The position numbers and the translations under genes were made by a program. Shown piece by piece: positions 12,394-31,376 of a stretch of DNA of 64,000 nt (the first letter of the stretch is position 1; each line of letters begins with the position of its first letter). Origin of the DNA: Selaginella moellendorffii (lineage: Eukaryota > Plantae > Lycopodiophyta); contig NW_003314262.1 in assembly GCF_000143415.4 (NCBI RefSeq), positions 2,239,046 to 2,303,045 on the forward strand, given 5' to 3'. Below the pieces are notes generated by a model that was not told the origin of the DNA, did not search any database, and saw only the letters and a list, made by a program, of their open reading frames with translations.

Positions 12394-12520
12394 GAAGAGT
12401 TGGAGCAACCTTGTGAAGAATATGTCTCGCTCCTTAAATGAGGAACATCTTCAGTGGTTCTTGCTCCCAACTTAATCTTCAAGATGATTGAAGATTAGAA
12501 TTAGTAAAATCTTTAGAAGC

Positions 12521-12830
12521 TTAGATCATTGAAACGATAAAGAGCAAGGTCGAAATTCCTGCTATTGCTGCTGCTGCCGTGAAAGTTTCCAAATCTTTTC
12601 TCGAGATGCTACTGCCGGCGGCGCTGCTGGAGCTGGAGCTTGACGATGGCGGAGTGGTGCCGCTGCCTGTGAGCGATGCATTTTGGGGCAGTGATTTGGA
12701 AAGCCGCGGAAGAAGTACCATGATCCGGGCCTGGTCATTGCGATCGAAGTGTCACCGTTGTTGAAAGATTGGATCGGTGAGGCGCTGGAGCATCGGTCGT
12801 AGTCATCCTCGGACACTTCCAAAACGTCGT
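12521..12830 (-). pseudogene. Phytocyanin exon-2 remnant (exon 1 absent, internal deletions)
   Basis: EVSEDDYDRCSSASPIQSFNNGDTSIAMTRPGSWYFFRGFPNHC: the Cu-ligand Cys is changed to Arg, GQKLSIDV is deleted and there is a frameshift. Confidence 0.85.
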
Positions 12831-13869
12831 GGCATATAGAAGATGCTCCCGTTAGAAAACTATCGAGCAGGACAGGAAGAAATCAATGTAAAAAAGAATA
12901 TACTAGAAAGCGTTTAGGAAAGTGTATAAATTATAAATTATACATTAATATAAATGATTAACAACCATTAGATAGTAGAATATTCAAGCATTTTCTAGAA
13001 CTACCAGAAAAAAGAAAAGAAAAGAGAATTGTAATTTTGCTTTAACAAGCAGCAGATAGTTTTTGGAATTTAAAAAATCAGGCCTTTAACTAGTTTGTAA
13101 TCAAATTTAATATTAATAATTAAATATTTAGAACTGGCTAATGAGATAGTCTATGTTACCGAAATTGCCTTGAAAATCTCTATTTTCAAGCTACCTTTAT
13201 TGGTCACAAATAGATTAGACATATTAAACTACAGAACTCCATTGACTAAATTAGAGCTCCTTGAGCTCTTCCGAGAATTTCCAAACTGTGCGCACCAATT
13301 CGAGACAATCATTCCACAGAATTACGTCTTCACAGACACACAGTCAAAAGGGTCCTTTAGATGTCGTCTTGAGCAATAGATCATCAATAACTTTGCTCTT
13401 CTTTTTTATTTGGATGCTTAGCTAGGGTACCATGTAACTGTATTGTTTTCAAATATATAAGTCTCAATCCTGTATGTGCCAGGGGTGGAGGCAAATTAAA
13501 ACATGCATTTTAAACCTAATAGATACCATTGGTGGCAATAGCTTCAAGTGGCAAGGAACATAATTTAGATACGGGAGGAATTTCGGGAGCTGGAAGTCAA
13601 GAGAAGACTGAGTGGGTGGGTCTCATGCCTCCATTGTAATTTATAATAATTTCCTTAATCATTAAAATTATTCTAAATTGGCCAATGTGATACACCGGGC
13701 ATTTCCATAAAATGCCAGCTTTAGTGTTTTAGCAAAACAAAACAAATGTGTGTAGTGGGCATTTGGTCTACTGGTACGATTCTTGCTTCAGGTGTGAGAG
13801 GTACCTAATAATTGTCTGTGCACTAGACGTTTGTATGTAATATCCAAATTTTATTCTTGCCAAAATTGT

Positions 13870-14883
13870 TCACACCTTGGAGGCCAGCACAAGACCAGCA
13901 ACTCCAAAGGTGAGAGCAACGCTTCCTCCATACTTCCTTCCAAACTCAGCAATGTTGGTGAAGGAATCGATGGCAGCATAGCCCTTTGCGTAGATTTCCT
14001 TGCCGACGATATTGTAGATGGCGCGAACTGGAGCAAGCACGGCCTGGTATGCGTATGGCAGGTACTCGGTTGCGCCGACAGCATCAAATATGGAGTCCAA
14101 GAACCACTCGCTGTGAGTCGATGCTAGAACATTGTTCACCATGATGCTGCCGGAGAGAGTGAGCGGGTTGTAGAGGCCTACCTTCTCAACCTTTTGTATT
14201 TCTGGAAAAGTAGCACAGAATCGTTAAATTCGAAACATCCCACCAATATATATGCTTTTTGCTTTCCTTACCAATGATTTGAGATGATTCCCACAGGGAA
14301 TCTCCAACCTTGAGGTCCTCGGCTCTCTTGTACACGAGCTTCCCATTGACAGCAACGGGAACAAAGTGGCCTGCAGTGAGTTCCAACATGTTTGAAGCGC
14401 TGTGCACTTGGAAAAACTTGGACATGGCATCAGCATCCTTGTGGCCGAAGGCATACACATCTGAATAGATATTCTTCCCCACTGCAACCTGTGGAAAAGT
14501 TATACTTGGACAAGATTTATGTGAAAGTATTCAACCTTGTCTCCAACATTAAGCTCCCTCACGAACTTAATTTCTCCATTATACATCTGAACAGTTGCAT
14601 CTCCTATAATAGCTTGAAAATTGTATGAAAGAAAAAAACGTGAATTCATATGAACCCTACCTGGGAAGCATCCTGGAGTGGCTGGAGTGGCTGGAGGGGG
14701 TGGAGTGCCTGGAGGAGGAGTGGCTGGAGGGGGTGGAGTGCCTGGAGGGGGTCTAGTGCCTGGAGGAGGAGTGGCTGGAGGAGGAGTGGCTGGAGGAGGA
14801 GGAGTTGGAGTTTGTGCCACTGCAACGCTTGCAGCGAAGGCAATGAAAGAAGTCAGGAAGATTAGAGCACTGGTATGAGCCAT
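13870..14883 (-). CDS. Secreted Pro/Thr-rich peptide fused to a Hedgehog-type Hint/Hog domain, copy 1 (279 aa)
   Basis: Exons 14883-14661, 14603-14536, 14488-14272 and 14201-13870 (840 nt, all GT-AG, open frame). Signal peptide; Pro-rich repeat; G|CFPGDATV; VRELNVGDKV; LELTAGHFV (TxxH); RAEDLKVGD; GLYNPLTLSGSIMVNNVLAS; then an SRR-like tail with a hydrophobic C-terminus. Confidence 0.93.
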
Positions 14884-16200
14884 TTCAAAACTGCTGGTCG
14901 CTAACACTCTAGGAGCAACCCATTTTATAGCAGAATGTAAGCATCTAATGTTTGGTTTCGTGCACCAAAAATTCAAACACAGGGGACATGTAACTAGTGA
15001 ATGGTGGTCCTAATTAAAAATATTGAATCCTTCTTATTTTGGTGAGAACCTAAATACCATCCATGGAGAAACTAAAGAGGAAAGTGTTTTTATTAAAATA
15101 AATTTGTGAGGGCCAAGTGTACAGCTATAATATCATATATTAATATTAGCATAGTGGGATTTTAGTAGCTGTTAAATTGGTTTCAATCAAGATTACTCGT
15201 TCTTGTATATAAATTAGGGTTTTTGGGCTAATTTATATGCACATTTCTATATTCCCTTTCTATATTCCAAACATTCACATTGGTGGAGATGAGGGGCACT
15301 TTTAATTGTCCCTAAGGAGTGTTTGGATTTAGAATTTTGGTTTAGATTTATCTTTTGCATCGTCTAGATCTAGGTTTTTCCATTTCCTTTCTTTTGTTCT
15401 TTCCTTTTAGGATTTTGGTTTGGATAGCTTTTTGCATTGTCTAGATCTACCATTTCTTTCTAGCTTTTTGTCATTTCTCTTTTTTTGCTCTTTCTTTTTC
15501 ATTCGTCTTCATGGCAAATCAGTAATCTCCTCCTTTAACTCTAGAGTAGTAGTTGGTACAATTGCTTGATGCTATGCACTTGCAATTGAACAATTAAACT
15601 CAATTGATGGTGGCATTCACGGCACGTGGTCCAACTCTTCTTGCTCTTCGTGCCAATCCTCACGTTCTGCTAAAGTTCTTTCATGGGAATCCTAGGGATG
15701 ATGTGTACCATTGGTTCAATCACTTCACAGTGATTGCCACATATCATTTTTGGGATGATGCTCGATGTTTATGTGAGTTTCCCACATGTCTCCAAGGGAC
15801 GGCATTGTAATGGTACAATGGTTTGAGTGCAACCACTCGTGGAGATTAGAGTGTTCTCCTAGATGTCTTTAAACGCGCCTTCGGACATGCCGATGACTAT
15901 GATGATGCCTTTCAACAATTGCATCGTCTTCGCCAAGGGCCATCTGAGATAGTGATGCAATTTGGCATTCATTTCCGAAGTCTTTTGCTTTGTGCGGATC
16001 CAAATATGTCGGAGCGGATCAAACTAGGAATGTTGTGGCTAGCACTTCGTCAAGATCTTGTCGGACTTGTGCATGCACTTGCTCCTGCCACCCTTGACAA
16101 TGCTCTTCGCTTGGCACAACGTTATAAGACGTCACCTCTTCCACTTCTCGCTGCACGTCCTTTAGCTCCACTTCCTATAGATGGTGGTCCTGTTTCAATG

Positions 16201-16803
16201 TGTAAGCTCCTGAGTTTAGACTTCTCGGGAGGTCACCCAATCTAGTACTATTCAAACCCAAGGACACTTAACCCCAAATATCCTAAGACTCTTAACCAAT
16301 TGGAAAAGGGGGTGCACTCTTATTCATAGGCCCTTTCCCTCTATATTTGAACCCTATAGACCATCTCTCAAGTCGTTCTCTTTGGTTGCTTACAATCCAC
16401 CACGCTTCCCTACAAGTTCACGCCCTCGTGAATGGAAGTTGAGAGCCGCAGCTCTCTCTCGAGCCCTGCTCTCTTGACACCCTACCCCTCGGGTCGAGCC
16501 CAGCGGGAGCAAACTGGACCAGCCAGATGTCAATCAATGTCAATCAACATGTGGTGCAATTCCCTTAGCCAACCAACAGAGTCAGACCCGAGACCGTTCT
16601 GATACCAAATGTAAGCTCTTGAGTTTGGACTTCTCGGGAGGTCACCCAACCCAGTACTATTCAAACCCAAGGACACTTAACCCCAGATATCCCAAGACCC
16701 TTAACCGATTGGAAAAGGGGGTGCACTCTTATTCATGGGCCCTTTCCCTCTATATTTAAACCCCATGGACCGTCTTTAAGGTCGTTCTCTTTAGTTGCTT
16801 ACA
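16201..16803 (-). mobile_element. Cassandra-like TRIM with 5S rRNA-derived sequence in both LTRs, nested in gag of element A
   Basis: 194-bp LTRs at 16201-16394 and 16610-16803, a 215-bp non-coding interior, TSD CAATG and an iMet-type PBS TGGTATCAG on the minus strand. The LTR minus strand reads GGTTAAGTGTCCTTGGG..TAGTACTAGATTGGGTGACCTCCCGAGAAGTC, resembling the 5S A-box/IE/C-box region. Confidence 0.9.
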
Positions 16804-18526
16804 CAATGGAGGTTGATGCTGTTGCTGCTTGAGTCCAAGGACAAGGGCGAGGAAGTGGTCGTGGCCGTGATGTTCGCTGTTGGGCATGTGATGAAGTTGA
16901 TCATACTTATTGGCATTATCGGCGTTTTCCGGATTGGCGACCTCCATTTCCTAGGTGGAGACTTTGGCATTAGCAACGTCCCGTTGGTGCTGCTGCAGTG
17001 GACAGTTTGAACACTGCGATACATCTAGGAAATGAGGAGTCGCATGAGTAACGGAGGGACCTTATGCGAATAAGTTAGTGACCCCTCCATCTTTCTTTCG
17101 GAAGTATCATCAAGGGGTTCACTCGGCACTGGTTCATTCAGTGTTTACTTTCCAAGCTCATTTTTATAACAAGAGGTCTGCTATTATTCTCTCCGTGTTG
17201 GTTGATATAGGTTCGAGTTTATCTTCTATTGCTCGACCTGTTGCCACAAGTTGTCATCTACACTTGCGTCATGTGGCAGATCCGATTTTCATTCTTTATG
17301 GCAACGGCCGTACACATGCATGTGCATAAGATGAGGTGGACCTGGTTGTGCATGTAGGCGATCTCGAGCTTGAGTTGTAGTCGTTGCAGGTGGTGCCGAG
17401 TCAAGCTTTTGACCTCATTCTTGGTATAGATTGGTTGCAGCACAATCATACCAAGTGTGATTTTGAGGCTTCTCCTCTTTGTCTCATACTTTCTTATGTT
17501 TCATCCATTCCTCTCACTTCCGTACCTTTTCGTCCCTTTACTTCTACCTCTGCTTCCATTACTTTTGTTTCCCCACTATTTCCTCCTATGTTTCCATCTT
17601 ATTCTACTCTTCCCTTTTCCGATCCCTCCGACGATATTTGTGTTGTAGCGGTGGACTGACTCATGAAGGAGTATTCTGATCTCTTTGAATTTGACTTATC
17701 ATCTGGGGCCAAGATTGCCACACGTCATCCAATTCCAACCAAGGATGCTTGTCCAATCAAGGTTCCCGTTCGTCTTCAGTCACTCCGCGACTTTTGAATA
17801 ACACCCTTCTCCAACATCTCTTGGATATTTGCCCGTAAAATCTTGATCTCCTTGGGTCCTTGGGCATTTGAACCTCATCTTGTGACAAAGCCTGATGGGA
17901 GTATTCATTTCTGTATCGACTATTGTCCGTTAAACTAAGTGACGATCCCAGATGTATACCCTATTCCTCACACTGCTAATCTCTTGGATCGTCTGGGGCG
18001 AAGTCGCTGGTTCACCAAGCTCGATTTTGCTTCTGGGTACTGGCAAGTACCAATGGCCGAAGTAGATATTCCTAAGACTGCTTTTCATACACCATTTGGT
18101 TTGTATGACTTCTTGGTGATGTTGTTTGGTTTGAACAATACTCTAACAACTTTCTAGCGGATGATGTATGAGGTTCTTTGCGATATGCCAAAGGTGACTA
18201 CTGAATTCATTGATGATGTCTTGATCCACTCGGAGGGGACGTGGGAGGACCACATTTATGATGTTTGTAAAGTGTTGGATCAGCTACGCGATGTTGGTTT
18301 AAAGCTGAAGCAGTCGAAGTGCATGTTTGGGTCCAAGGACACAACTTATCTTGTGTACCGTATTTCTCGTGAGGGTTTGCAAGTTGATCATAACAAACTT
18401 GTGGCTGTTCTAAAGTTCCCTACTCCGAAGTGTGTGAATGATGTGCAGCGCTTTTTGGGCAAGGTGCAGTATCTCGGTCATTTTGTGGATCATCTTTTTG
18501 ATCGCACTGCACCGTTGCGAGCGTTG

Positions 18527-19679
18527 TGTAAGCCACAAATTTTTCCTTTCTAATTTGCCAGCTTACCTCGTTTATCTGGCCAACTCTGCCTTGGCTTGTG
18601 CTAAGTTCCCTCGCCAAGGTTCTCGCCCATGGTACCAGCTCCTACTTGGTTCTACTTGGTTTCAGCTACTCACTGCATGAGCAACGGAGTGTTAGCCATC
18701 CATCTACAAAATCCCAAATCTCTCCCAATCCCCCTCCCCGAGTTAGACTGGACTTAAGGTTCGGCTACACTCCCCGCAGGCACAAGCAACCAAGCACACC
18801 AAACCTCCAGATTCCTAACACCCCTTGGTACCACAAGACTTGATCATGGGACCCTCTAAATCCCAAGCCTTGGGTGCAACACTTGCTTCGGGACGTCGGG
18901 GCGAAACACCATGGCCTAACGGCCCGGTATGGGTACCTCTACGCCCCCACTTCTCTCCCAAAGGGAAGGCCCAAGCCCCTAGGAAGGGCGAGGACCAATG
19001 AGCCACAAGGTACTCAAGTGGGGCACCACTCCACATGAGCCGGGAGCACCTTAGTCGGTTTCCCTTTCGGGAGTGGGAGCTGCTCTTGAGCACTTCCCTG
19101 GGTGGCCCCTCCGGCACCACCCAAGCCCATGCTCACTCCCACCCAAGGCCCCTCGGCCCCAATCTCAACCTCAAGTCAGTTTGGAAGCACTACTGGAGAG
19201 TTCCTTCAAGAATGGTTCCTAGACCTCACTATCCCTACTATACTTTTGGAACCCCCTGCAGCCCCCCCCCCTCCCCCCCTGGGAGATGCACACTTTGGGC
19301 TTTCACCCCTTGAGCTATATTAGTATTTGGACTTAGTCTCAGAATCGATCTCGGACTCGATCTCGGACCCGACTTCGGACTCGGTCTCAGACTCAATTTC
19401 AGACTCGATCTCGGACCCGATCTCGGACTCGACTTCGGACTCGACCTCGGACTCCGTCTTGGACCCGATTTGGATCTCAGACTTTGTCTCGAACTCGGTC
19501 TCGAACTCGGTCTCCGATTCGGCCTCGGCTCGATCCCGGACTCTATCTCGAACTCGGTCTCTGAGTCGGTCTTGGACTCGATCTTCAACTCGGTCCCATC
19601 CAATGAACTCTTTTTGTCATTTCGGTCATGCTTTCGGGGATCTTTAGCCTACGATATCTCGGGGAGTCGGTTCCTTACA
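18527..19679. mobile_element. 1153-bp solo-LTR-like insertion in pol of element A
   Basis: Ends TGTAAG..CTTACA with TSD CGTTG. Element B shows the empty site (GCGTTGCTGAAG). Confidence 0.88.
19327..19600. repeat. Degenerate 12-bp tandem array (about GACTCGATCTCG) inside the solo LTR
   Basis: About 20 imperfect units, visible directly. Confidence 0.85.
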
Positions 19680-22025
19680 CGTTGCTGAAGTCATCAATAT
19701 CATCTTTCACATGGTCTCCAGATTATGAGCAGATGTTTAAGGATCTCAAAGAGCTATTAACGACTCCTCCGGTTTTGGCATATCCTGACTACACTTGACC
19801 TTTTATTTTGCACATGGATGCTTCTGATATTGGTTTTGGAGATGTGTTGATGCAAGAGAGCTCGAGTGTGCTTGGTCAGCACCATCCCATTGCGTATATA
19901 AACCGTACATTACAACTAGCCGAAATGAACTACTCCACGACAAAGAAAGAGTGTTTAGCAGCAGTTTGGGGTTTCGAGAAACTTCATGTATATCTACATG
20001 GTTCTCGGATGTTACTTGAAGGTGATCATGCTATTGTTACTTCATTATTGAAGCGGAAGAACTTAGTTGGTTATACTGCTCAATGGGCTTTGAAGCTTTA
20101 GATATATGATTTTGATGTTGTTCATTGCCCAGGGAGTTCTTTGGCTGATGCTAATGCCCTTTCTCGAGCTCGTCTTCTTTCTCCATTTTCTTTTCATGTT
20201 TCTAATGAGCTTGTTGTTCCAGCCTCTGTGGATTTTCTAGACGAGGATTCTGTGCCGTCGGCGGTTGTTGTACTTGACGTTCAGTGTCCACAAGGCGCCG
20301 AGCAAGATCTACCTTCTCTTGATGAGGTTCACGAGGCTCAAAAGATTGAGCTGTGGATTCGAAGGCTTTGAGATGGGTTTGAGAATGTTGCATCACTTGT
20401 TGATGACTTGCCTTTCCGGCATTTACATTCTCAATATCACCTCGAAGACGGCCTTATTTATTTTGTGGGGACGAATCCTGACGATCATTTACAATTGGTG
20501 GTGCCTTCTATCTTTATTCCGCGGTTTCTCCATGCCTATCATGATTCTCCTATTCTAGATGGGCATATGGGACATCGTCGTATAATTGAGAAGTTGTGCA
20601 GGTTTTTCTATTAGTTGGAGATGCGACGTGATATTATCTGGTATGTGCGTCGCTACATTTGATGCCAAGCTTGTAATACTCCCCTTCAGGCTGCGGAAGG
20701 ACTGTTGGAGTCAATTGCAATTTCCCATCCATTTGAGTTGGTGGCATTTGATCTTATGGGACCTTTTCCACGGTCGACTGTTGGCAATGAGTATGTTATT
20801 ATTATTTCTGACTACTTGACTTAATTGGGTGGAAGTTGGTGCTCTTGCTAGCGCCTCTGCAACTTCTATTGGATACTTCCTCCTCAATCGAGTGGTGTTT
20901 TAGCATTCTTGTCCAAAGCAGATTCTTTCAGATAATGGTCCTGCATTTATGGCTGAGGCATTTCATGTTTTGACGTCTCGGCTAGGGATACGCCACACTT
21001 TCACGAGTGCTTATCATTCACAATCAGATGGTCTGGTGGAATGGCTCATTCAGACATTCAAAGGAATGATTGCGAAGTATGTGAACTTTCAGCATTCTGA
21101 TTGGGATGGTTATTTGCATCTCTTCGGTATGCATATATCACAGGGGTATAGAGTTTTGTTGGTGCTTCACCATATAAACTTCTATATGGTCATGATCCAA
21201 TATTACCAACGGAGCTGGGTTTACCTTCGCGATTGCCACGAGCTGTGGATGTTAAGTCGTGGGACTAGTATTTGACGAGCATTCTTCCATTTGTCTGAGC
21301 AGAGTCTACTGAACACTTAGGCCATGTATAAGTGGGACAACAACGGTGCTATAACTCCCATCATCGTCCACCTGCGGAGTACAAAGTGGATGATTTGGTG
21401 CTAGTCTGTTTTCCCCATCTTATAGTATGTGGTTTATCTAAGGGGCTCCTTGCGTAGTGGAAAGGACCGTATTGAGTGTTGCGGCAAGTTGGACCACAAG
21501 TTTATTAGGTTCGGCATGACGTCCAGCAGATCGATCCTCAAGAGATTGTGCATGTGCAACGGTTGAAACGCTTCATACAAAGGGATCAGGAGCAGTTAAT
21601 ACCACCTATAAATTTGTTAATGCCTCCTCCTAACGTTCCTCCAAATCTTGGCCTGTTTACAAGAGAACCCTGATAGTTTTCTATTATTTCGAGAGGAGGG
21701 GATGATGTGAGGGCCAAGTGTACGGCTACGATGCCGTATATTAATATTAGTATAGTGGGATTTTGGTAGCTATCGGATTGGTTTCAATCTGGACCACTCG
21801 TTCCTGTATATAAGCTAGGGTTTTTAAGCTAATTTATATGCACATTTTTGTATTCCCTTTCCATATTCCAAACACTCACAAATTAAGATTAGTTTAAAGT
21901 TGTTTTACATTTATTTCTCACACTACTAATTTTGGGTTAAAAGCTTGAAAACTTCAAAAGGTTGATTTATTCCTTTAAATACCGTACCAACTGAATTTAT
22001 TTATTCCTTTAAATACCCTAATCCA

Positions 22026-22841
22026 ATGTCGAAGGAGAGACTGGATCATGGCCTGGAGAAGGCGGTGAGTTTGTACAAAGAGTGCTCAGGCACAGGGAAG
22101 GGCCGTTTTCTAGTGGCAGACGATGTGATCTACTCTAGCTTTGAGAAATGGAGTTCCAACAATGAAGACTGCTGGAGGCTGGCCTTCCTCGAGGGAGAAG
22201 CGGGATCCGGCGTTGGCAGTGTCTACATATTTGGCGATCCCAGTAACGTCCACAACGAGACGAAGCAGTGGTTCTTCCACAAGCTATGCCGGCAAGTGGA
22301 GAGGCACTTGATGCTCACGAGCCCTGAGCTGGACATCCGCTCCTTCGTCCGGGTCCTGGGATCATCGAGGTTTGCGCTTGGTAACGGGAGCAAGGAGCCA
22401 GGCGCCTCTTTCTCCACGGCCTCGCAGAAGCATCCATTCCCTCGAGTTGTCCTTGAAGTGGCCTACAAGAACGAGTCTTTTGAGGTACTCGTCAGGGAAC
22501 TTAACCACTGGGTTCACTCGGGCTGTAAGCTCGCAATCAGGATACAAATCTCGTATGCCACCCTCAGCACTAGCAGCAGCAGCCTGCAACTGTTGTGGGT
22601 GCAGGAGGAAGCTGGCAAAGGTACACAGATTATAAATTTTAGTCCTAGCGTTTGCACCTTGGAAACAAAGGAGGATTTCTTGGTGTGGTTCCCGTTCAGC
22701 ATGCTTTCCAGCGATGTTCCAGACTGCCATGACATCCCACTCACGTTTGATCTGTATCAGCTCCAGTCGACGATCAAGGAGCTGGTGCAGGAAGAGTTTG
22801 ATATGTATCAGCTACAGTCGGTGATCAAGGAGATGGTATAG
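22026..22841 (+). CDS. Intronless PD-(D/E)XK (Uma2/Crinkler-REase-like) nuclease, copy 2; predicted catalytic Asp changed to Gly
   Basis: 271-aa ORF with PSNVHNE, GSSRF, KEPGASF (KEPDASF in the other copies), PRVVLEVAYKNES and LAIRIQI. Confidence 0.75.
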   Translation: MSKERLDHGLEKAVSLYKECSGTGKGRFLVADDVIYSSFEKWSSNNEDCWRLAFLEGEAGSGVGSVYIFGDPSNVHNETKQWFFHKLCRQVERHLMLTSPELDIRSFVRVLGSSRFALGNGSKEPGASFSTASQKHPFPRVVLEVAYKNESFEVLVRELNHWVHSGCKLAIRIQISYATLSTSSSSLQLLWVQEEAGKGTQIINFSPSVCTLETKEDFLVWFPFSMLSSDVPDCHDIPLTFDLYQLQSTIKELVQEEFDMYQLQSVIKEMV

Positions 22842-22984
22842 GAAGAGTTGGAGCAACCTTGTGAAGAATATGTCCTGCTCCTTAAATGAGGAACATCTTC
22901 AGTGGTTCTTTCTCCCAACTTAATCTTCAAGATGATTGAAGATTAGAATTAGTAAAATCTCTTGATTTAAATTTTATTAAGAAT

Positions 22985-23372
22985 TCAACGAAGATAACGC
23001 TGCTCACATTGAAACTCTAAAGAGCAAGATCGAAATTTCTGCTGTTGCTGCTGCTGCCGTGAGAGTGTCCAAATCTTTTCTCGAGATGCTACTGCCAGCG
23101 GTGCTGCTGGAGCTGGAGCTGCTGGAGCTTGACGATGGTGGAGTGGCAACGCTATCTGTGAGCGATGCATTTTGGACATCGATGGACAGCTTTTGGCCCC
23201 CTTGGCAGTGATTTGGAAAGCCACAGAGGAAGTACCATGATCCGGGGGCCTAGTCATTGCGATCGAAGTGTCACCGTTGTTGAAAGACTGGATCGGTGAG
23301 GCGCTGGAGCATCGGTCCCAGTCATCCTCGGACACTTCCAGAACGTCGTGCCGTTGGCTGTTGTACTTGAAA
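22985..23372 (-). pseudogene. Phytocyanin exon-2 remnant (exon 1 absent, frameshift after MTRP)
   Basis: Near-identical to exon 2 of 31377-32027 but shifts frame before the Cys/His ligands. Upstream homology stops inside the intron. Confidence 0.85.
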
Positions 23373-24336
23373 CCTTGCATGCATAGAAGATGCTCCCGTT
23401 AGAAAACTATCGAGTAGGACAGGAAGAAATCAATCAACAAAGCAAAAAACAGAAAAGGAAAAAGAAAAGAAAAGAGAACGGGACACAATAGTTTTTCCTT
23501 AACTAGTTTGTAATTAAATTTAATGTTAATAATTAAATACTTAGAACTGGCTAATGAGATTATTCGAGATTCTAGCAAATTTAGTAAGATTGCCTATTTC
23601 AAGCTACCTTTATTGGTCACAAATATATTACTCCATTGACTAAATTAGAAGCTCTTCCGAGCATTTCCAAACTGTGTTCACCGATTGGAGACAATCATTC
23701 CACAGAATTACGTCTTCACAGACACATTCCCTTTTTAGCCGTCTTGAGCAATAGATCATCAAGGTGGAGGCAAATTAAAACATGCATTTTAAACCTAATA
23801 AATACCATTGATGGCAATAGCTTCAAGTGGCCCACTAGATTAAAGGAACATACTTTAGATACTACTTGCCACCAAAAGTCTATGAATTTGGGAGGAATTT
23901 CGGGAGAAGACTGAGTGAGTGGGGGTGGGGCATATTTGCCGGGCGCTAATGACCCTATAAATATGTATTAATAACAATAATCATTGTGTGAGTGCCTGGA
24001 ATATGGAAAGGGAATACAGAAATGTGCATCCCAATTAGCCCAAAAACCCTAGCTTATATATAGGAGCGAGTGGTCCGGATTGAAACCAATCCGACGGCTA
24101 CCAAAATCCACTACGCTAATATTAGTATACGGCATCATAGCCGTACACTTGGCCCTCACATCATCCCCTCCTCTCAGAATAATGGAAGGCCATCAGGGTT
24201 CTCTTGTAGACGGGCCAGGATCTGGAGGAACGTCAGGAGGAGGCATCGGCGGATCTGTAGACGGTATTAACTGCTCCTGATCCCTTTGTATGAAGCGTTT
24301 TAACCGCTGCACATGCACAATCTCCGGAGGATCGGC

Positions 24337-27300
24337 CTACTGAATGTCGTGCCGAACCTCATAAACTTGCGGTCCAACTTGCCGCAACACCTGATACGGT
24401 CCTTTCCACTGCGCAAGGAGCCCCTTAGATAAACCATGTACCGTAAGATGGGGAAAACGGACTAACACCAAATCATCCACTTTGTACTCCGCAGATGAAC
24501 GATGATGGGAGTTGTAGCGCCGTTGTTGTCCCACTTGTACGTGGCCTAAGTGTTCAGCAGACTCTGCTCGGACAAGTGGAAGAATGCTTGTCAAATACTG
24601 ATCCCATGACCTAGCATCAGGAGCTTGTGGCAATCGCGAAGGTAAACCCAGCTCTGTTGGTAATATTGGATCATGACCATATAGAAGTTTATATGGTGAA
24701 GCACCAACAAAACTCTGCACCCCTATGACATAGGCATACCGAAGAGACGGCAAATAACCATCCCAATCCGAATGCTGAAAGTTCACATACTTCGCAATCA
24801 TCCCTTTGAATGTCCGAACAAGCCGTTCCACCAGACTGTCTGATTGTGGATGATAAGCACTCATAAAAGTGTGGCGTATCCCCAACCGAGATGTCAAAAC
24901 ATGAAATACCTCAGCCATAAATGCAGGACCATTATCCGAAAGAATCCGCTCTGGACAAGAATGTTGGAACACCACTCGATTGAGGAGGAAGTATCCAACA
25001 GCAGTTGCAGAGGCGCTAGCAAGAGAACCAACTTCCACCCAACGAGTCAAGTAGTCAGAAGCAATAATAACATACTCATTGCCAGCAGTCGATCGTGGAA
25101 AAGGTCCCATAAGATCAAATGCCACCAACTCAAACGGACGGGAAATTGCAATTGACTCCAACCGTCCTTCCGTAGCACAAGGGGGAGTATTACGAGCTTG
25201 GCACCAAACGCAGCTACGCACATACCGGATAATATCACGTCGCATCTCCGGCCAATAGAAAGACCTACGCAGCTTCTCGGTGATACGACGGTGTCCCATA
25301 TGCCCACCTAGAACAGGAGAATCATGGTAGGCATGGAGAAACCGCGGAATAAACACTGAAGGCACCACCAACCGTAAATGATCATCAAGATCTGTCCCCA
25401 CAAAATAAATAAGGCCATCTTTAAGGCGATATTGAGAATGTAAATGCCGGAAAGGCAAGTCATCAGCAAGTGATGCAGGATTCTCAAACCCATCTTGAAG
25501 CCTTCGAATCCATGGCTCAATCTTTTGAGCTTCGCGAACCTCATCAAGAGAAGGTAGATCTTGCTCTACGCCCTGTGGACACTGAACGTCAAGGACAGCA
25601 ACCGCCGACAGCACAGAATCCTCATCTAGAAAATCCACAAACGCTGGAACAACAGGTTCGTCAGAAACATGAGAAGTGAGTGGAGAAGGAAGAGGAGCTC
25701 GAGAAAGGGCATCAGCATCAGCCATAGAACTCCCTGGGCGATGAACAACATCGAAATTATATATCTGAAGCTTCAAAGCCCATCGAGCCGTACGACCAAC
25801 CAGGTTCTTCCGCTTCAATAATGAAGTAACAGCAGCATGGTCACCTTCAAGTAACGTCCGAGAACCATGTAGATATGCATGAAGTTTCTCGAAACCCCAG
25901 ACTGCTGCTAAACACTCCTTCTCTGTCGTGGAGTAGTTCATCTCCGCTGGTTGTAATGTACGGCTTATGTATGCAATGGGATGGCGCTGACCAGGCACAC
26001 TCAAGCTCTCTTGCATCAACACACCTCCAAGACCAATGTCAGAAGCATCCACGCGCAAAATAAAAGGTCGAGTGTAGTCAGGATATGCCAAAACCGGAGG
26101 AGTCGTCAATAGCTCTTTGAGATCCACGAACGCCCGCTCACAATCCGGAGACCAGATGAAAGATGACGTTGATGACTTCAGCAACGCTCGCAATGGTGTA
26201 GTGCGATCGGAAAGATGATCCACAAAACGACCGAGATACTGCACCTTACCCAAAAAACGCTGCACATCATTCACACATTTCGGAGTAGGGAACTTTAGAA
26301 CAGCCACAAGTTTGTCAGGATCAATTTGCAAACCCTCACGAGAAATACGGTACCCAAGATAAGTTGTGTCCTTGGACCCAAATACGCACTTTGACAGCTT
26401 CAGCTTTAAACCAACATCACGTAGCCAATCCAACACTTTACAAACATCACGAACGTGCTCCTCCCACGTCCCCTCCGAGTGGATCAAGACATCATCAATG
26501 AAGTCAGCAGTCACTTCCGGCATATCGCAAAGAACCTCGTCCATCATCCGCTGGAAAGTTGCGGGAGCATTGTTCAAACCAAACGGCATCACCAAGAACT
26601 CATATAAACCAAATGGTGTACGAAAAGCAGTCTTAGGAATATCTTCTTCGGCCATTGGTACTTGCCAATACCCAGAAGCAAGATCTAGCTTGGTGAACCA
26701 ACGACTTCGCCCCAGACGATCTAAGAGATCAGCAGTGTGAGGAAGAGGATACACATCTGGGATCGTCACTTCGTTTAACGGGCGATAGTCGATGCAGAAA
26801 CGAATACTCCCATCAGGCTTTGTCACAAGATGAGGTTCACATGCCCAAGGACTCCACGACTTCCGAATAACACCCTTCTCCAGCATTTCCTTGACGTTGG
26901 CTCATAAATCTTGATCTCCTTAGGTGACTGACGACGAACAGGAACCTTGATTGGACGAGCATCCCCGGTTGGAATCGGATGACGTGTGGCAATCTTGGCT
27001 CCAGACGATAGGTCAAATTCAAAGAGATCAGAATACTCCTTCATGAGCCGGTCAACTGCTGCAACACAAAGATCGTCGGAGGGATCGGAAAAGGGAAAAG
27101 CAGAACAAGATGGAAACACAGAAGGAAAGAGTGGGGGAACAAAAGTAATGGAAGCAGAGGTAGAAGTAGAGGGATGAAGAGGTATGGAAGTGAGAGGAAT
27201 GGATGAAACATAAGGAAGTATGAGACAAGGGGGAGAAGCCTCAAAGTCACACTTGGCATGATTGCGCTGCAACCAATCCATACCAAGAATGAGGTCAAAA

Positions 27301-27680
27301 GCTTGACTCGGCACCACCCGCAACGACTGCAACTCAAGTTCGAGATCGCCCACATGCACAACTAGGTCCACCTCATCCCGTGCACATGCATGTGTACGGC
27401 CGTTGCCATAAAGAATGAAAACTGGTTCCGCCGCACGACGCAAGTGTAGACGACAACGTGTGGTAACAGGTCGAGCAACAGAAGATAAACTCGAACCTGT
27501 ATCAACCAACACGGAGAGAATAATAGGAGACCTCTTGTTATAAAAACGAGCTTGGAAAGTAAACACGGGATGAACCGGTGCCGAGTGAACCCCTTGATGA
27601 TACTCCCGAAAGAAAGATGGAGGGGTTACTGATTTATTCGCGCAAGGTCCCTCCATTACTCGTGCGACTCCTCGTTTCTC
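24337..27680 (-). pseudogene. Pol of element B (protease-RT-RNaseH-integrase) with a 1-bp frameshift near 26905 and a premature TAG at 24337
   Basis: VLVDTGSS, FIDDVLI, RVDASDIG, HHCC and DDE integrase, WKGPY; no chromodomain. Comparison with element A shows the frameshift and the stop are lesions. Confidence 0.9.
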
Positions 27681-28588
27681 GGATGCATCTCGGTGTCCAG
27701 ACCTTCCACTGCAGCAGCACCCATGGGACGTTGCTGACGCCAAGGTCTCCACCCAGGAAATGGAGGTCGCCAATCCGGAAAACAACGGCAACGCCGATAA
27801 GTATGACTAACTTCATCACACGCCCAGCAGCGAACATCACGGCCACGACTACGTCCTCGTGCTTGTCCTTGGACTCGAGCAGCAGCAGCATCAACCTCCA
27901 TTGGAACAGGACCATCACCCATAGGAAGGGGAGCGGAAGGACGTGCAGCAAGAAGTGGAAGAGGCGACGTCTCATAACGTTGTGCCAAGCGAAGAGCATC
28001 ATCAAGGGTGGCAGGAGCAAGTGCATGCACAAGTCCGACAAGATCTTGACGAAGTGCTAGCCACAACATTCCTAGCTTGATCTGCTCCGACATATTTGGC
28101 TCCGCACGAAGCAAAAGACTTCGGAAACGAACGCTAAATTGCATCACCGACTCAGATGGCCCTTGGCGAAGACGATGCAATTGTTGGAAAGCATCATCAC
28201 AATCATCGGCATGGCCGAAGGCGCGTTTGAAGACGTCCAGGAGAACACTCCAATCCCCACGAGTGGCTGCGCTCAAACCATTGTACCACTGCAACGCCGT
28301 CCCTTGGAGACATGTGGGAAACTCACGCAAACGTCGAGCATCATCCCAAGAATGATATGTGGCAATCACCGTGAAGTGATCGAACCAATGGTACACATCA
28401 TCCCCAGGATTCCCGCGAAAGAACTCCGGCCGAACGCGAGGATTGGCACCAAGAGTAGGAGGAGTTGGACCACATGCCGTGAATGCCGCCATCAATTGAG
28501 TTTGGTTGTTCAATTGCAAGCGCATAGCATCAAGCAATTGGACCAACTGCTGCTCGAGAGTCAAAGGAGGAGAGTACTGATCTGCCAT
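27656..28588 (-). CDS. Gag of element B
   Basis: MADQYSPP..., retrotransposon gag motifs (LRQGPSESVMQF, GPVPMEVD) and a zinc knuckle CWACDEVSHTYRRC. Confidence 0.9.
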   Translation of the reverse strand: MADQYSPPLTLEQQLVQLLDAMRLQLNNQTQLMAAFTACGPTPPTLGANPRVRPEFFRGNPGDDVYHWFDHFTVIATYHSWDDARRLREFPTCLQGTALQWYNGLSAATRGDWSVLLDVFKRAFGHADDCDDAFQQLHRLRQGPSESVMQFSVRFRSLLLRAEPNMSEQIKLGMLWLALRQDLVGLVHALAPATLDDALRLAQRYETSPLPLLAARPSAPLPMGDGPVPMEVDAAAARVQGQARGRSRGRDVRCWACDEVSHTYRRCRCFPDWRPPFPGWRPWRQQRPMGAAAVEGLDTEMHPRNEESHE

Positions 28589-29050
28589 GGAGAATGAAAA
28601 AGAAAGAGCAAAAGAAAATGACAAAAAGCTAGAAGGAAATGGTAGATCTAGACAATGCAAAAAGCTAGATCTAAACCAAAATCCTGAAAAGAAAAAAAAG
28701 AAGGAAATGGAAAAAGCTAGATCTAGACAATGCAAAAGTTAGATCTAAACCAAAATCCCAAATCCAAGCACTCCTCAAGGGCAATCAAACGTGCCCCTCA
28801 CCTCCACCAATGTGAATGCTTGGAATATGGAAAGGGAATACAGAAATGTGCATCCCAATTAGCCCAAAAACCCTAGCTTATATACAGGAGCGAGTGGTCA
28901 GGATTGAAACTAATCCGACGGCTACCAAAATCCACTACGCTAATATTAGTATACAGCATCATAGCCGTACACTTGGCCCTCACAATTGTAATTTATAATA
29001 ATATCCTTAACGATTAAAATTATCTAAATTAGAATTCTTGCCCAAATTGT

Positions 29051-30060
29051 TTACACCTTGGAGGCCAGCACAAGACCAGCAATTCCAAAGGTGAGAGCAA
29101 CGCTTCCTCCATACTTTGTTCCAAACTCAGCAATGTTGGTGAAGGAATCGATGGCAGCATAGCCCTTTGCGTAGATTTCCTTGCCCACGATGTTGTAGAT
29201 GGCGCGAACTGGAGCAAGCACGGCCTGGTATGCGTATGGCAGGTACTCGGTTGCGCCGACAGCATCAAATATGGAGTCCAAGAACCACTCGCTGTGAGTG
29301 GATGCTAGAACATTGTTCACCATGATGCTGCCGGAGAGAGTGAGCGGGTTGTAGAGGCCTACCTTCTCAACCTTTTGTATTTCTGGAAAAGTAGCACAGA
29401 ATCGTTAAATTCGAAACATCCCACCAATATATATGCTTTTTGCTTTCCTTACCAGTGATTTGAGATGATTCCCACAGGGAATCTCCAACCTTGAGGTCCT
29501 CGGCTCTCTTGTACACGAGCTTCCCATTGACAGCAACGGGAACAAAGTGGCCTGCACTGAGTTCCAACATGTTTGAAGCGCTGTGCACTTGGAAAAACTT
29601 GGACATGGCATCAGCATCCTTGTGGCCGAATGCATACACATCTGAATAGATATTCTTCCCCACTGCAACCTGTGGAAAAGTTATACTTGGACAAGATTTA
29701 TGTGAAAGTATTCAACCTTGTCTCCAACATTAAGCTCCCTCACGAACTTAATTTCTCCATTATACATCTGAACAGTTGCATCTCCTATAATAGCTTGAAA
29801 ATTGTATGAAGAAAAAAACGTGAATTCACATGAACCCTACCTGGGAAGCATCCTGGAGTGCCTGGAGGGGGTGGAGGAGTGGCTGGAGGGGGTGGAGGAG
29901 TGGCTGGAGGGGGTGGAGTGGCTGGAGGGGGTGGAGTGCCTGGAGGGGGTCTAGTGGCTGGAGGAGGAGTGGTGGGAGGGGGTGGACTTTGTGCCACTGC
30001 AACGCTTGCAGCGAAGGCAATGAAAAAAGTCAGGAAGATTAGAGCACTGGTATGAGCCAT
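29051..30060 (-). CDS. Secreted Pro/Thr-rich peptide fused to a Hedgehog-type Hint/Hog domain, copy 2 (278 aa)
   Basis: Exons 30060-29841, 29784-29717, 29669-29453 and 29382-29051 (837 nt, open). Same motifs as copy 1 except LELSAGHF. Confidence 0.93.
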
Positions 30061-30380
30061 TAGCTAGCTCGAAACTGCTGGTTGCTAACACTCTAGGAGC
30101 AAGCCATTTTATAGCAGAATGTAAGCATCTAATGTTTGGTTTCGTGCACCAAAAATTCAAACACGAATGGTGGTCCTAATTAAGAACATTGAATCCTTCT
30201 CACTGATTTTGGTGAGAACCTAAATACGAGAAACTATTTTTATTAAAATAAATTAAAAATATTTTAAAGTTGTCGTTTTACATTTATTTCTCACACTACT
30301 AATTTTGGGTTAAAAGCTTGAAAACTTGAAAAGGTTGATTTATTCCTTTAAATACCGTACCAACTAAAAACCCTAATCCA

Positions 30381-31181
30381 ATGTCGAAGGAGAGACTGGA
30401 TCGTGGCCTGGAGAAGGCGGTGAGTTTGTACAAAGAGTGCTCAGGCACAGGGAAGGGCCCTTTTCTAGTGGCAGACAATGTGATCTACTCTAGCTTTGAG
30501 AAATGGAGTTCCAACAATGAAGACTGCTGGAGGCTGGCCTTCCTCAAGGGAGAAGCGGGCTCCGGCGTTGGCAGTGTCTACATATTTGGTGATCCCAGTA
30601 ATGTCCACGACGAGACGAAGCAGTGGTTCTTCCACAAGCTATGCCGGCAAGTGGAGAGGCACTTGACGCTCACGAGCCCCGAGCTGGACATCCGCTCCTT
30701 CGTCCGGGTCCTGGGATCATCAAGGTTTGCGCTTGGTAACGGGAGCAAGGAGCCAGACGCCTCTTTCTCCACAGCCTCGCAGAAGCATCCATTCCCTCGA
30801 GTTGTCCTTGAAGTGGCCTACAAGAACGAGCCTTTTGAGGTACTCGTCAGGGAACTTAACCACTGGGTTCGCTCGGGCTGTAAGCTCGCAATCGGGATAC
30901 AAATCTCGTATGCCACCCTCAGCACTAGCAACAGCAGCCTGCAACTGTTGTGGGTGCAGGAGGAAGCTGGCAAAGGTACACAGATTATAGATTTTAGCCC
31001 TGGCATTTGCACTTTGGACACAAAGGAGGATTTCTTGGTGTGGTTCCCGTTCAGCATGCTTTCCAGCGATGTTCCAGACTGCCATGACATCCCACTCACG
31101 TTTGATCTGTATCAGCTCCAGTCGACGATCAAGGAGCTGGTGCAGGAAGAGCTATATCAGAAAGAGCTATATCACGTTTGA
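30381..31181 (+). CDS. Intronless PD-(D/E)XK (Uma2/Crinkler-REase-like) nuclease, copy 3; motifs intact
   Basis: 266-aa ORF with PSNVHDE...KEPDASF...PRVVLEVAYKNE...LAIGIQI, matching the H..E / PD / EVA pattern of Uma2-like restriction-endonuclease-fold proteins. Confidence 0.78.
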   Translation: MSKERLDRGLEKAVSLYKECSGTGKGPFLVADNVIYSSFEKWSSNNEDCWRLAFLKGEAGSGVGSVYIFGDPSNVHDETKQWFFHKLCRQVERHLTLTSPELDIRSFVRVLGSSRFALGNGSKEPDASFSTASQKHPFPRVVLEVAYKNEPFEVLVRELNHWVRSGCKLAIGIQISYATLSTSNSSLQLLWVQEEAGKGTQIIDFSPGICTLDTKEDFLVWFPFSMLSSDVPDCHDIPLTFDLYQLQSTIKELVQEELYQKELYHV

Positions 31182-31376
31182 TCTGTATCAGCTACAGGAG
31201 AGCAACCTTGTGAAGAATATGTCCCGCTCCTTAAATGAGGAACATCATCAGTGGTTCTTGCTCCCAACTTAATCTTCAAGATGATTGACGATTAGAATTA
31301 GTAAAATCTTTAGAAGCTTAGATCATTAAAAATATTGATTTAAATTTTATTAAGAATTCAACGAAGATAACGCTGC

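What the first reader, a model, noticed from the sequence alone, without database searches (positions are those of the whole stretch)
13870..30060. Hedgehog-style autoprocessing precursor that would release a 47-48 aa Pro/Thr glycopeptide in a land plant (two intact copies)
Seen: both copies (13870-14883, 29051-30060) splice into open frames of signal peptide + (TPPP/ATPP/GTPP)n + Gly|Cys-Phe-Pro-Gly + complete Hint domain + a ~80-aa tail. Established: in Hedgehog proteins the Hint Cys1 attacks the preceding Gly and the sterol-recognition region delivers cholesterol to the new C-terminus. Angiosperms have no Hedgehog pathway. Inference: the only cargo here is an extensin/AGP-like hydroxyproline-rich peptide. 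The product could therefore be a sterol- or otherwise C-terminally-conjugated cell-surface glycopeptide, a non-GPI way to anchor or cross-link wall peptides. I recall Hog domains being noted in non-seed plants in comparative surveys, so the domain itself may be known. I know of no functional description of this cargo.
Basis: partly seen in the sequence, partly recalled or inferred. Interest (0 to 1): 0.92.

Follow-up and report, generated by a model that had tools for sequence, protein, structure and literature searches.

The report
Spikemoss Hedgehog-type self-cutting proteins, proline-rich cargo
Two neighbouring, intact genes of the spikemoss Selaginella moellendorffii encode a membrane-anchored Hedgehog-type self-cutting domain behind a short proline/threonine-rich peptide; the domain family has been known in this plant since 2008, but nobody has tested what it does or what it attaches to the peptide.

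Summary
Both minus-strand genes (13870-14883 and 29051-30060) splice through three GT-AG introns into open frames of 279 and 278 aa. Each frame has a signal peptide, a 48 or 47 aa Pro/Thr tract, a Gly71|Cys72-Phe-Pro-Gly junction, a Hint domain (Pfam PF01079, E 1e-26; best fold match Drosophila Hedgehog-C), a helical tail and a C-terminal membrane helix.

Copy A is RefSeq XP_024535844.1, "warthog protein 4". Bürglin (2008) already listed a Selaginella moellendorffii Hog paralogue and suggested sterol-like lipidation, so the domain is not new.

New here:
- The Pro/Thr cargo is a young tandem-repeat expansion, 29-70 aa long among paralogues.
- It is nested among sister genes that carry only 4-6 residues of cargo.
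- The Hog part is under purifying selection (dN/dS about 0.2).
- The plant/algal clade has a near-invariant His where Hedgehog has its sterol-activating Asp46. An engineered D46H Hedgehog still works.
- The Cys143 position is variable in this clade, and a motif S-x-H-S-x-W-x-x-D is invariant.
- Most members have a C-terminal membrane anchor.

Self-cleavage at Gly|Cys is well supported by homology. A sterol adduct and glycosylation of the peptide are untested inferences. This is a moderately interesting member of a known but functionally unstudied family.

The parts
13870..14883 (-). Copy A gene (4 exons: 14883-14661, 14603-14536, 14488-14272, 14201-13870), 279 aa, = XP_024535844.1 'warthog protein 4'
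   Evidence: Splice model. Identical to P0001. Pfam Hint E 1.1e-26.
29051..30060 (-). Copy B gene (4 exons: 30060-29841, 29784-29717, 29669-29453, 29382-29051), 278 aa
   Evidence: The Hog part differs from copy A at 4 residues. The older partial model P0181 matches it.
14815..14883 (-). Signal peptide, residues 1-23, ending A-V-A before Gln24
   Evidence: Read from the sequence: a short polar start, a hydrophobic core and small residues at -3/-1. AlphaFold puts a helix at 2-23. No signal-peptide predictor was available.
14671..14814 (-). Pro/Thr-rich cargo, residues 24-71 (48 aa), encoded by a tandem array of 15-18 nt units
   Evidence: Tandem Repeats Finder 14673-14805. Length is 29-70 aa among paralogues.
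14659..14673 (-). Predicted cleavage junction Gly71|Cys72-Phe-Pro-Gly; the Gly75 codon is split by intron 1
   Evidence: Cys72 is present in 79 of 79 aligned relatives. It aligns to Cys1 of Hedgehog-C.
14441..14443 (-). His113 codon, at the position of Hedgehog general base Asp46
   Evidence: It aligns to the His of PDB 6TYY, the D46H mutant. His in 89 of 91 relatives.
14366..14377 (-). Thr135-Ala-Gly-His138, the TXXH motif of Hint domains
   Evidence: Thr/Ser in 92 of 93, His in 92 of 93.
14095..14121 (-). Ser197-Thr198-His199-Ser200-Glu-Trp202-Phe-Leu-Asp205. Thr198 sits at the Hedgehog Cys143 position. S-x-H-S-x-W-x-x-D is near-invariant in this clade.
   Evidence: Position 198 is Ala 32, Ser 22, Cys 15, Thr 12, Val 12. 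S197 is kept in 92/94, H199 in 89/94, S200 in 90/94, W202 in 87/91 and D205 in 90/91.
14023..14061 (-). Leu217-Arg229, Bürglin's motif K (L-P-x-x-Y-Q-x-x-L-A-P-x-R), the start of the helical region after the Hint fold
   Evidence: P218, Y221, Q222, P227 and R229 near-invariant. PMC2362128 states that moss Hog domains keep motifs J and K. AlphaFold helices at 214-250.
13879..13923 (-). C-terminal hydrophobic segment, residues 263-277, followed only by Lys-Val: a likely membrane anchor
   Evidence: (helix 253-278). Of 112 relatives, 77 have such a segment, mostly followed by Lys/Arg.
11633..31727 (.). Tandem duplication of a unit of about 3.7 kb that carries the gene, each copy later interrupted by a Ty3/gypsy element
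   Evidence: Self-comparison. Pfam on the open frames.

Best explanation
Each gene encodes a secretory-pathway precursor of the Hog family (a Hint fold plus a helical C-terminal region). In this plant/algal clade a C-terminal transmembrane helix holds the precursor in the membrane.

Proposed mechanism, with the status of each step:
1. The signal peptide is removed. This is inferred from the sequence.
2. Cys72, helped by Thr135 and His138, converts the Gly71-Cys72 peptide bond into a thioester. This rests on homology with conserved catalytic residues.
3. A hydroxyl nucleophile resolves the thioester. It is probably activated by the clade-invariant His113, which occupies the place of Hedgehog's Asp46.
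4. A membrane sterol is the most likely nucleophile. The domain sits against the membrane, and an engineered Asp46-to-His Hedgehog still transfers sterols. The identity of the nucleophile is inference only.
5. The product would be a 47-48 aa Pro/Thr-rich peptide, probably hydroxylated and O-glycosylated, released from the anchored Hog fragment and possibly carrying a C-terminal lipid ester.

The Pro/Thr tract is a recent, length-variable repeat expansion specific to one Selaginella subclade. The conserved, selected part of the protein is the Hog module.
For: Fold and family:
- Pfam Hint E 1.1e-26.
- AlphaFold model with pLDDT 96-98 over the Hint part.
- The best Foldseek matches are Drosophila Hedgehog-C: 6TYY (TM 0.83, rmsd 2.5) and 1AT0.
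- phmmer hits only Hedgehog chains in the PDB.

Catalytic residues, over 94 relatives:
- Cys72 is kept in 79/79 and His138 in 92/93; Thr/Ser135 is kept in 92/93.
- His113 is kept in 89/91 and aligns with the His of the D46H mutant.
- D46H keeps autoprocessing and widens sterol tolerance (PMC8529194 citing Zhao 2019; PMC12054796 Fig. 1C).

Selection and expression:
- dN/dS is about 0.2 for the Hog part among three paralogues.
- Intron 3 is spliced in contigs of run X1.
- ESTs of a paralogue are listed in PMC2362128.

Membrane anchor:
- A C-terminal hydrophobic helix followed by basic residues occurs in 77 of 112 relatives.

Prior suggestion:
Against: - No biochemistry exists for any plant Hog protein. 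Literature searches found none.
- Hedgehog's Cys143 is required in Sonic Hedgehog and forms a branched thioester. Here it is Thr, and in the clade it is often Ala or Val. The second step must therefore differ from the animal one.
- The Pfam Hint profile matches only to position 162 of 213. The sterol-recognition part is therefore not matched by sequence.
- Sister paralogues carry only 4-6 residues between signal peptide and Cys1. Releasing a cargo peptide may not be the conserved purpose.
- Only one of the three introns was confirmed by reads. Three raw RNA runs held almost no reads.
Confidence: 0.6

Rival explanations
1. The same self-cleavage happens, but water resolves the thioester. The Hog module is then only a self-cutting release device. 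It frees an unmodified, soluble Pro/Thr glycopeptide from a membrane-anchored precursor.
For: - The Hedgehog Cys143 position is not conserved.
- The sterol-recognition part of the Pfam profile is not matched.
- Hint domains without the tail cleave hydrolytically. 1AT0 is such a fragment, and PMC7906309 describes it as a hydrolytic cleavage product.
Against: - The 80-aa helical region after the Hint fold, with motif K and the invariant S-x-H-S-x-W-x-x-D, is as conserved as the catalytic core. That conservation is unexplained if only hydrolysis is needed.
- His113 at the general-base position is near-invariant.
Confidence: 0.2
2. The Pro/Thr tract is not a functional product. It is a tolerated slippage expansion, or at most a glycosylated spacer. 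The conserved job of the membrane-anchored Hog module does not depend on cargo. That job might be sensing or consuming a membrane lipid, or exposing an N-terminal Cys.
For: - In the tree, the Pro/Thr clade (support 100/97) is nested inside paralogues whose cargo is only T-N-T-T-G or T-N-T-N-N-S.
- Cargo length is 29, 47, 48, 50 and 70 aa among close paralogues or alleles, while the Hog part is 93-99% identical.
- The tract is a 15-18 nt tandem array.
- Hog dN/dS is 0.2.
Against: - Every expanded copy keeps the Pro/Thr/Ala/Gly make-up typical of hydroxyproline glycomodules.
- Relatives in mosses and algae carry clearly folded cargo: hevein PF00187 in P0021, Cys-rich modules in P0006, and a conserved region of about 230 aa. 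At the family level the module does serve cargo.
Confidence: 0.17
3. The two copies are decaying duplicates without function, next to retrotransposons.
For: Both copies abut Ty3/gypsy elements. One element lies 220 bp upstream of the copy A start codon. Three raw RNA runs held almost no reads.
Against: - Both frames are intact with canonical splice sites.
- dN/dS is 0.2.
- All catalytic residues are kept.
- Spliced contigs reach depths of 218-284 in run X1.
Confidence: 0.03

Closest known systems
Animal Hedgehog C-terminal autoprocessing domain (HhC; Drosophila Hh 1AT0/6TYY, human SHH)
   Same: - Hint fold (TM 0.83 to 6TYY).
- Gly|Cys-Phe-Pro junction and TXXH motif.
- A helical region after the Hint fold that starts with the A-P-x-R motif.
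- A signal peptide and a secretory route.
   Different: - Asp46 is His.
- The Cys143 position is Thr, and it is variable in the clade.
- There is an extra invariant S-x-H-S-x-W-x-x-D motif.
- A true C-terminal transmembrane helix is present.
- The cargo is a 48-aa low-complexity peptide, not the Hedge signalling domain.
- No Hedgehog pathway is known in plants.
Plant, algal and red-algal Hog proteins of Bürglin 2008 (pSm Hog, pPp Hog, pSl Hog; PMC2362128)
   Same: The same family and the same species. pSm Hog is a paralogue, closest to P0154/P0160, with the same Hog part and hydrophobic tail. Bürglin already noted that the motif J cysteine is replaced by Ser, Thr or Asp.
   Different: pSm Hog has only T-N-T-S before Cys1. 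pPp and pSl carry a Cys-containing region of about 230 aa. The Pro/Thr-cargo paralogues, the His at the Asp46 position and the membrane anchor were not found described in the parts of that paper read and searched here.
Nematode Hog proteins (warthog, groundhog, quahog; Xiphinema 'Thog') and choanoflagellate Hoglet
   Same: A Hog module fused to non-Hedge cargo. Thog has about 70 residues of Thr/Ser, and Hoglet has a Thr stretch of about 200 residues. Low-complexity, O-glycosylatable cargo on a Hog domain therefore has precedent. RefSeq names the window's protein 'warthog protein 4' from this similarity.
   Different: There is no Wart domain here, so the RefSeq name reflects only the Hint domain. 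The cargo is Pro-dominated and resembles plant hydroxyproline glycomodules. The lineage is different, and the expansion is independent.
Arabinogalactan peptides, classical AGPs and extensins (hydroxyproline-rich glycoproteins)
   Same: A signal peptide followed by a tract that is 88% Pro+Ala+Ser+Thr. It has T-P/A-P dipeptides at both ends and contiguous Pro3-4 blocks. As in GPI-anchored AGPs, a C-terminal processing signal would be exchanged for a lipid.
   Different: There is no GPI signal on the peptide. There is no Ser-Pro4, no Tyr cross-link motif and no Lys. The C-terminal processing module is a Hog domain. Hydroxylation and glycosylation are unproven.
Inteins and bacterial intein-like (BIL) domains
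   Same: Hint fold with Foldseek hits at E 1e-7 to 1e-4. The first step is an N-to-S acyl shift at Cys1.
   Different: There is no C-terminal Asn plus +1 nucleophile and no C-extein. The sequence is closer to Hedgehog than to any intein.

Membership tests
Hog domain family (Hint fold plus C-terminal sterol/adduct recognition region) | Hint fold | tested here: met
   Pfam PF01079 E 1.1e-26. AlphaFold pLDDT 96-98. Foldseek top hits are 6TYY and 1AT0.
Hog domain family (Hint fold plus C-terminal sterol/adduct recognition region) | Nucleophilic Cys1 after a small residue (Gly|Cys-Phe-Pro) | tested here: met
   Gly71|Cys72-Phe-Pro-Gly in both copies. Cys is kept in 79/79 relatives and the -1 residue is Gly, Ser or Ala in most.
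Hog domain family (Hint fold plus C-terminal sterol/adduct recognition region) | TXXH motif | tested here: met
   Thr135-Ala-Gly-His138 aligns to TPAH of Drosophila Hh and is conserved.
Hog domain family (Hint fold plus C-terminal sterol/adduct recognition region) | Region after the Hint fold with Bürglin's motifs J and K | tested here: inconclusive
   A motif K-like L-P-x-x-Y-Q-x-x-L-A-P-x-R is near-invariant and helical. Bürglin states that moss Hogs have J and K. The Pfam profile beyond position 162 is not matched, and the phmmer alignment to SHH in that part is weak on its own (E 0.28).
Animal Hedgehog-type cholesterolysis | Asp46 general base | tested here: not met
   His113 occupies the position and is His in 89/91 relatives. 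An engineered D46H is active, so the function may be kept by another residue.
Animal Hedgehog-type cholesterolysis | Cys143 (branched thioester intermediate) | tested here: not met
   Thr198 here. The clade has Ala 32, Ser 22, Cys 15, Thr 12 and Val 12 at this position. C143A and C143D block SHH processing.
Animal Hedgehog-type cholesterolysis | Sterol esterified to the C-terminal Gly of the released fragment | not testable with these tools
   This needs an in vitro cleavage assay with sterols and mass spectrometry.
Hedgehog ligands / nematode warthog proteins (the RefSeq name) | Hedge or Wart N-terminal domain | tested here: not met
   Residues 24-71 are a Pro/Thr repeat with no Pfam family.
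Hydroxyproline-rich glycoproteins (AGP / AG peptide / extensin) | Signal peptide plus a tract rich in Pro, Ala, Ser and Thr with X-Pro glycomodules | tested here: met
   Of the 48 cargo residues, 42 are Pro, Ala or Thr (none is Ser). There are T-P-T-P and A-T-P-A-T-P ends and Pro3-4 blocks.
Hydroxyproline-rich glycoproteins (AGP / AG peptide / extensin) | Extensin Ser-Pro3-5 repeats and Tyr cross-link motifs | tested here: not met
   There is no Ser and no Tyr in the cargo of copy A.
Hydroxyproline-rich glycoproteins (AGP / AG peptide / extensin) | Prolyl hydroxylation and O-glycosylation | not testable with these tools
   This needs a Hyp assay, glycan analysis or Yariv binding.

The most novel reading that the evidence does not exclude
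These proteins would be the first case of Hog-mediated protein lipidation outside animals. A plant Hog module uses a natural His general base and a Cys143-independent second step. It esterifies a phytosterol, or another membrane alcohol, to the C-terminal Gly of a hydroxyproline-glycosylated peptide. The result would be a non-GPI, sterol-anchored cell-surface glycopeptide.
Probability: 0.2. Interest if true: 0.85.

Novelty: new member of a known kind. Interest (0 to 1): 0.45.

Why it matters
Covalent sterol attachment to proteins is described as unique to animal Hedgehog ligands (abstract of PMC7242414). It has been an open question since 2008 whether the widespread non-animal Hog proteins also lipidate their cargo.

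The Selaginella genes are small (279 aa) and have a simple cargo that is easy to follow. They naturally carry the His-for-Asp general-base swap that was engineered in Drosophila Hedgehog. They also lack the cysteine recently shown to be essential in Sonic Hedgehog. This makes them a compact natural test case for how the second chemical step of Hog autoprocessing can vary.

For plant cell-surface biology, a positive result would add a new way, besides GPI, to tie a glycopeptide to the membrane. A negative result (plain hydrolysis) would define a self-cutting release module for secreted plant peptides.

Tried and rejected
- The first whole-protein homologue search was swamped by proline-rich words. 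It was repeated on residues 71-279.
- The look-up of encoding contigs had no record for P0001 or P0152. Only P0151 gave DNA, as locus L001.
- Raw RNA runs X21-X23 gave 0-2 reads each. Those reads had 5-6 differences and so come from another paralogue.
- Literature searches for any functional study of plant Hog or 'warthog' proteins found none. The absence is limited to the held library.
- The original D46H paper (PMC7106946) is not held. Its result is cited through PMC8529194 and PMC12054796.
- The ESM Atlas look-up only repeated 'Hint domain'.
- A GPI-signal reading of the C-terminal tail was considered and judged less likely. There is no polar spacer between the small residues (Gly261-Gly262-Ser263) and the hydrophobic run. 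Relatives continue with Lys/Arg-rich cytosolic tails after the helix. No GPI or signal-peptide predictor was available.
- A protein-splicing (intein) reading was rejected, because there is no C-extein and no terminal Asn plus nucleophile.

Full report
**What is in the sequence**

Both claimed copies are real genes on the minus strand.
- Copy A has exons 14883-14661, 14603-14536, 14488-14272 and 14201-13870.
- Copy B has exons 30060-29841, 29784-29717, 29669-29453 and 29382-29051.
- All six introns are 47-70 nt long and start GT and end AG.
- The frames are 279 and 278 aa. A tblastn of the copy A protein against the window finds only these two loci.
- My copy A model matches the database protein P0001 at 100% identity (residues 171-279 matched; same length, 279 aa). 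P0001 is XP_024535844.1, 'warthog protein 4' of Selaginella moellendorffii. That identifies the genome. Earlier scan notes had already called it a spikemoss.

**Protein layout (copy A numbering)**

- Residues 1-23 are a signal peptide ending A-V-A.
- Residues 24-71 are the cargo: 27 Pro, 10 Thr, 5 Ala, 4 Gly, 1 Arg and 1 Gln.
- The junction is Gly71|Cys72-Phe-Pro-Gly.
- The Hint fold runs to about residue 198.
- An 81-residue tail follows. It is helical and ends in a hydrophobic segment (263-277) followed only by Lys-Val.
- The two copies differ at four residues in the Hog part and by in-frame insertions and deletions in the cargo.

**Is it a Hedgehog-type domain?**

Yes.
- Pfam Hint PF01079 matches residues 69-201 at E 1.1e-26 and 94 bits, against a cut-off of 29.7. 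The single exons hit the profile in colinear order.
- phmmer against all PDB sequences finds only Hedgehog chains.
- An AlphaFold model built on 94 relatives has pLDDT 96-98 over the Hint part and 90-96 over most of the tail.
- Its best Foldseek matches are Drosophila Hedgehog-C structures: 6TYY (TM 0.83, rmsd 2.5 A) and 1AT0. Inteins and BIL domains follow at much weaker E-values.

**Active site**

The residue alignment to Hedgehog-C and column counts over 94 relatives give the following.
- Cys72 corresponds to Cys1 and is kept in 79/79.
- Thr135 and His138 correspond to the TXXH motif. They are kept in 92/93.
- His113 sits exactly where Hedgehog has Asp46, the general base that activates cholesterol. 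It is His in 89/91 relatives. It aligns with the His of 6TYY, which is the engineered D46H mutant.
- That mutant keeps autoprocessing and accepts a wider range of sterols (PMC8529194 summarising Zhao et al. 2019; PMC12054796 Fig. 1C).
- Thr198 sits where Hedgehog has Cys143. In Sonic Hedgehog, Cys143 forms a branched thioester, and C143A and C143D block processing.
- In this clade the position is Ala 32, Ser 22, Cys 15, Thr 12 and Val 12. It cannot be a conserved catalytic residue here.
- Instead the clade has a near-invariant S197-x-H199-S200-x-W202-x-x-D205 motif, and a motif K-like L-P-x-x-Y-Q-x-x-L-A-P-x-R.
- A separate first-reader note on this window said that both sterol-transfer residues are substituted. 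That is correct, but the His substitution is not evidence of lost function.

**Membrane anchor**

- Of 112 relatives with a complete tail, 77 have a C-terminal 17-residue window with mean Kyte-Doolittle hydropathy of 1.6 or more.
- In most of them Lys/Arg-rich residues follow it. This is the pattern of a type I transmembrane anchor with a short cytosolic tail.
- Animal Hedgehog-C has no such helix.
- In the Selaginella genes the tail after the helix is only 2-3 residues. A GPI signal cannot be excluded. The missing polar spacer and the relatives argue for a membrane helix.

**The family and its cargo**

- An exhaustive profile-free search with exon 4 found 470 proteins at E up to 1e-3.
- Named relatives come from S. 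moellendorffii (more than ten genes), the mosses Ceratodon and Physcomitrium, the liverwort Marchantia paleacea, and the green algae Coccomyxa and Gonium. No seed plant appears.
- Cargo is diverse:
  - a conserved Cys-containing region of about 230 aa in mosses, Marchantia, Coccomyxa and Selaginella P0175;
  - Cys-rich modules with weak, sub-threshold similarity to STIG1/CPL1 (P0006);
  - a hevein chitin-binding domain (P0021, PF00187);
  - small 4-5-Cys peptides (P0157, P0004);
  - or almost nothing, as in T-N-T-S, T-N-T-T-G and T-N-T-N-N-S (P0160, P0153, P0154).
- Pure Pro/Thr cargo occurs only in one S. moellendorffii subclade: copies A and B here, plus P0151, P0152/P0185 and P0182 on another scaffold.

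**Prior knowledge**

- Bürglin (BMC Genomics 2008, PMC2362128) reported Hog proteins in S. moellendorffii, S. lepidophylla and Physcomitrella.
- He noted that their motif J cysteine is replaced by Ser, Thr or Asp.
- His pSm Hog, built from ESTs, is the minimal-cargo paralogue.
- I found no functional study of any plant Hog protein in the held library.

**Evolution of the cargo**

- The Pro/Thr tract is encoded by a tandem array of 15-18 nt units at 14673-14805.
- Its length is 29, 47, 48, 50 and 70 aa among close paralogues or alleles whose Hog parts are 93-99% identical.
- In a maximum-likelihood tree of Hog parts, all short Selaginella genes form one clade (100/100).
- The Cys-peptide types branch first. 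The Pro/Thr clade (100/97) is nested within the minimal-cargo types.
- The tract is therefore a young, derived expansion between the signal peptide and the Gly|Cys junction.
- The Hog part is under purifying selection: dN/dS is 0.20-0.23 among copy A, copy B and P0151 (using DNA of L001).
- The conserved, selected unit is thus the Hog module. A Hog module with only 4-6 residues of cargo has been maintained in the same genome.

**Expression**

- Contigs of run X1 skip exactly intron 3 (14202-14271) in two sequence variants, at depths of 284 and 218.
- One variant has the copy B-type junction. The other belongs to a further paralogue.
- Such intron-less contigs show cDNA.
- Introns 1 and 2 were not covered by the listed pieces. 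Three raw RNA-seq runs of the species held almost no reads.

**Genomic context**

- The two genes lie in a tandem duplication of a unit of about 3.7 kb.
- Each unit was later split by a Ty3/gypsy element.
- The degraded element at 15105-21880 begins 220 bp upstream of the copy A start codon.
- The element with intact gag, protease, RT-RNase H and integrase frames at 23987-28985 lies just 3' of copy B.

**Mechanism and verdict**

- Self-cleavage at Gly71|Cys72 by an N-to-S acyl shift is strongly supported by homology and conserved residues.
- The second step is inferred. The invariant His at the general-base position, the conserved tail and the membrane anchor favour transfer to a membrane alcohol such as a sterol.
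- The loss of Cys143 and the unmatched sterol-recognition profile leave plain hydrolysis open.
- Hydroxylation and glycosylation of the peptide are plausible from composition only.
- Extensin-type cross-linking has no basis, because the peptide has no Tyr and no Ser-Pro4.
- The near cargo-less sister genes suggest that the Pro/Thr peptide may not be the reason the module is kept.

The finding is real and correctly read at the level of domains. It concerns an already annotated member of a family known in this species since 2008. Its value is as a compact test case for lipidation by Hog domains outside animals.

Noticed in passing
window 14095-14121 (residues 197-205) and alignment A1: The plant/algal Hog clade has a near-invariant motif S-x-H-S-x-W-x-x-D right after the last Hint strand. 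It lies where animal Hedgehog has S-C-Y-A. It could supply the chemistry that Cys143 supplies in animals.
   Followed up: partly
window 23987-28985 (minus strand) and 15105-21880: There are two copies of one Ty3/gypsy LTR retrotransposon family, 88-89% alike and in opposite orientation. The first has intact gag, protease, RT-RNase H and integrase frames. The second is degraded and starts 220 bp upstream of the copy A start codon.
   Followed up: partly
window 22026-22841, 30381-31181 and 11540-12025 (plus strand): A repeated open frame of 161-271 aa with no Pfam match lies in the 'X' part of the duplicated unit of about 3.7 kb, next to each Hog gene.
   Followed up: no
proteins P0153, P0154, P0155, P0160 (other scaffolds of the same genome): Sister Hog genes have only T-N-T-S, T-N-T-T-G or T-N-T-N-N-S between the signal peptide and Cys1. 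Each carries an N-glycosylation sequon. It is unexplained what a Hog module does with a cargo of 4-6 residues.
   Followed up: partly
protein P0021 (unnamed source, 309 aa): A relative carries a hevein-type chitin-binding domain (PF00187) as cargo and keeps Cys at the Cys143 position. It would be a chitin-binding protein released or lipidated by a Hog module.
   Followed up: no
window 8001-10000 and 54001-57000: Two stretches have very low G+C (0.23-0.32), against 0.42-0.51 elsewhere in the window.
   Followed up: no
window 14604-14660: Intron 1 of copy A is 57 nt, a multiple of three and free of stops, so a retained intron would stay in frame. In copy B it is 56 nt. The older annotation P0183 of a paralogue partly reads into the homologous intron.
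   Followed up: no
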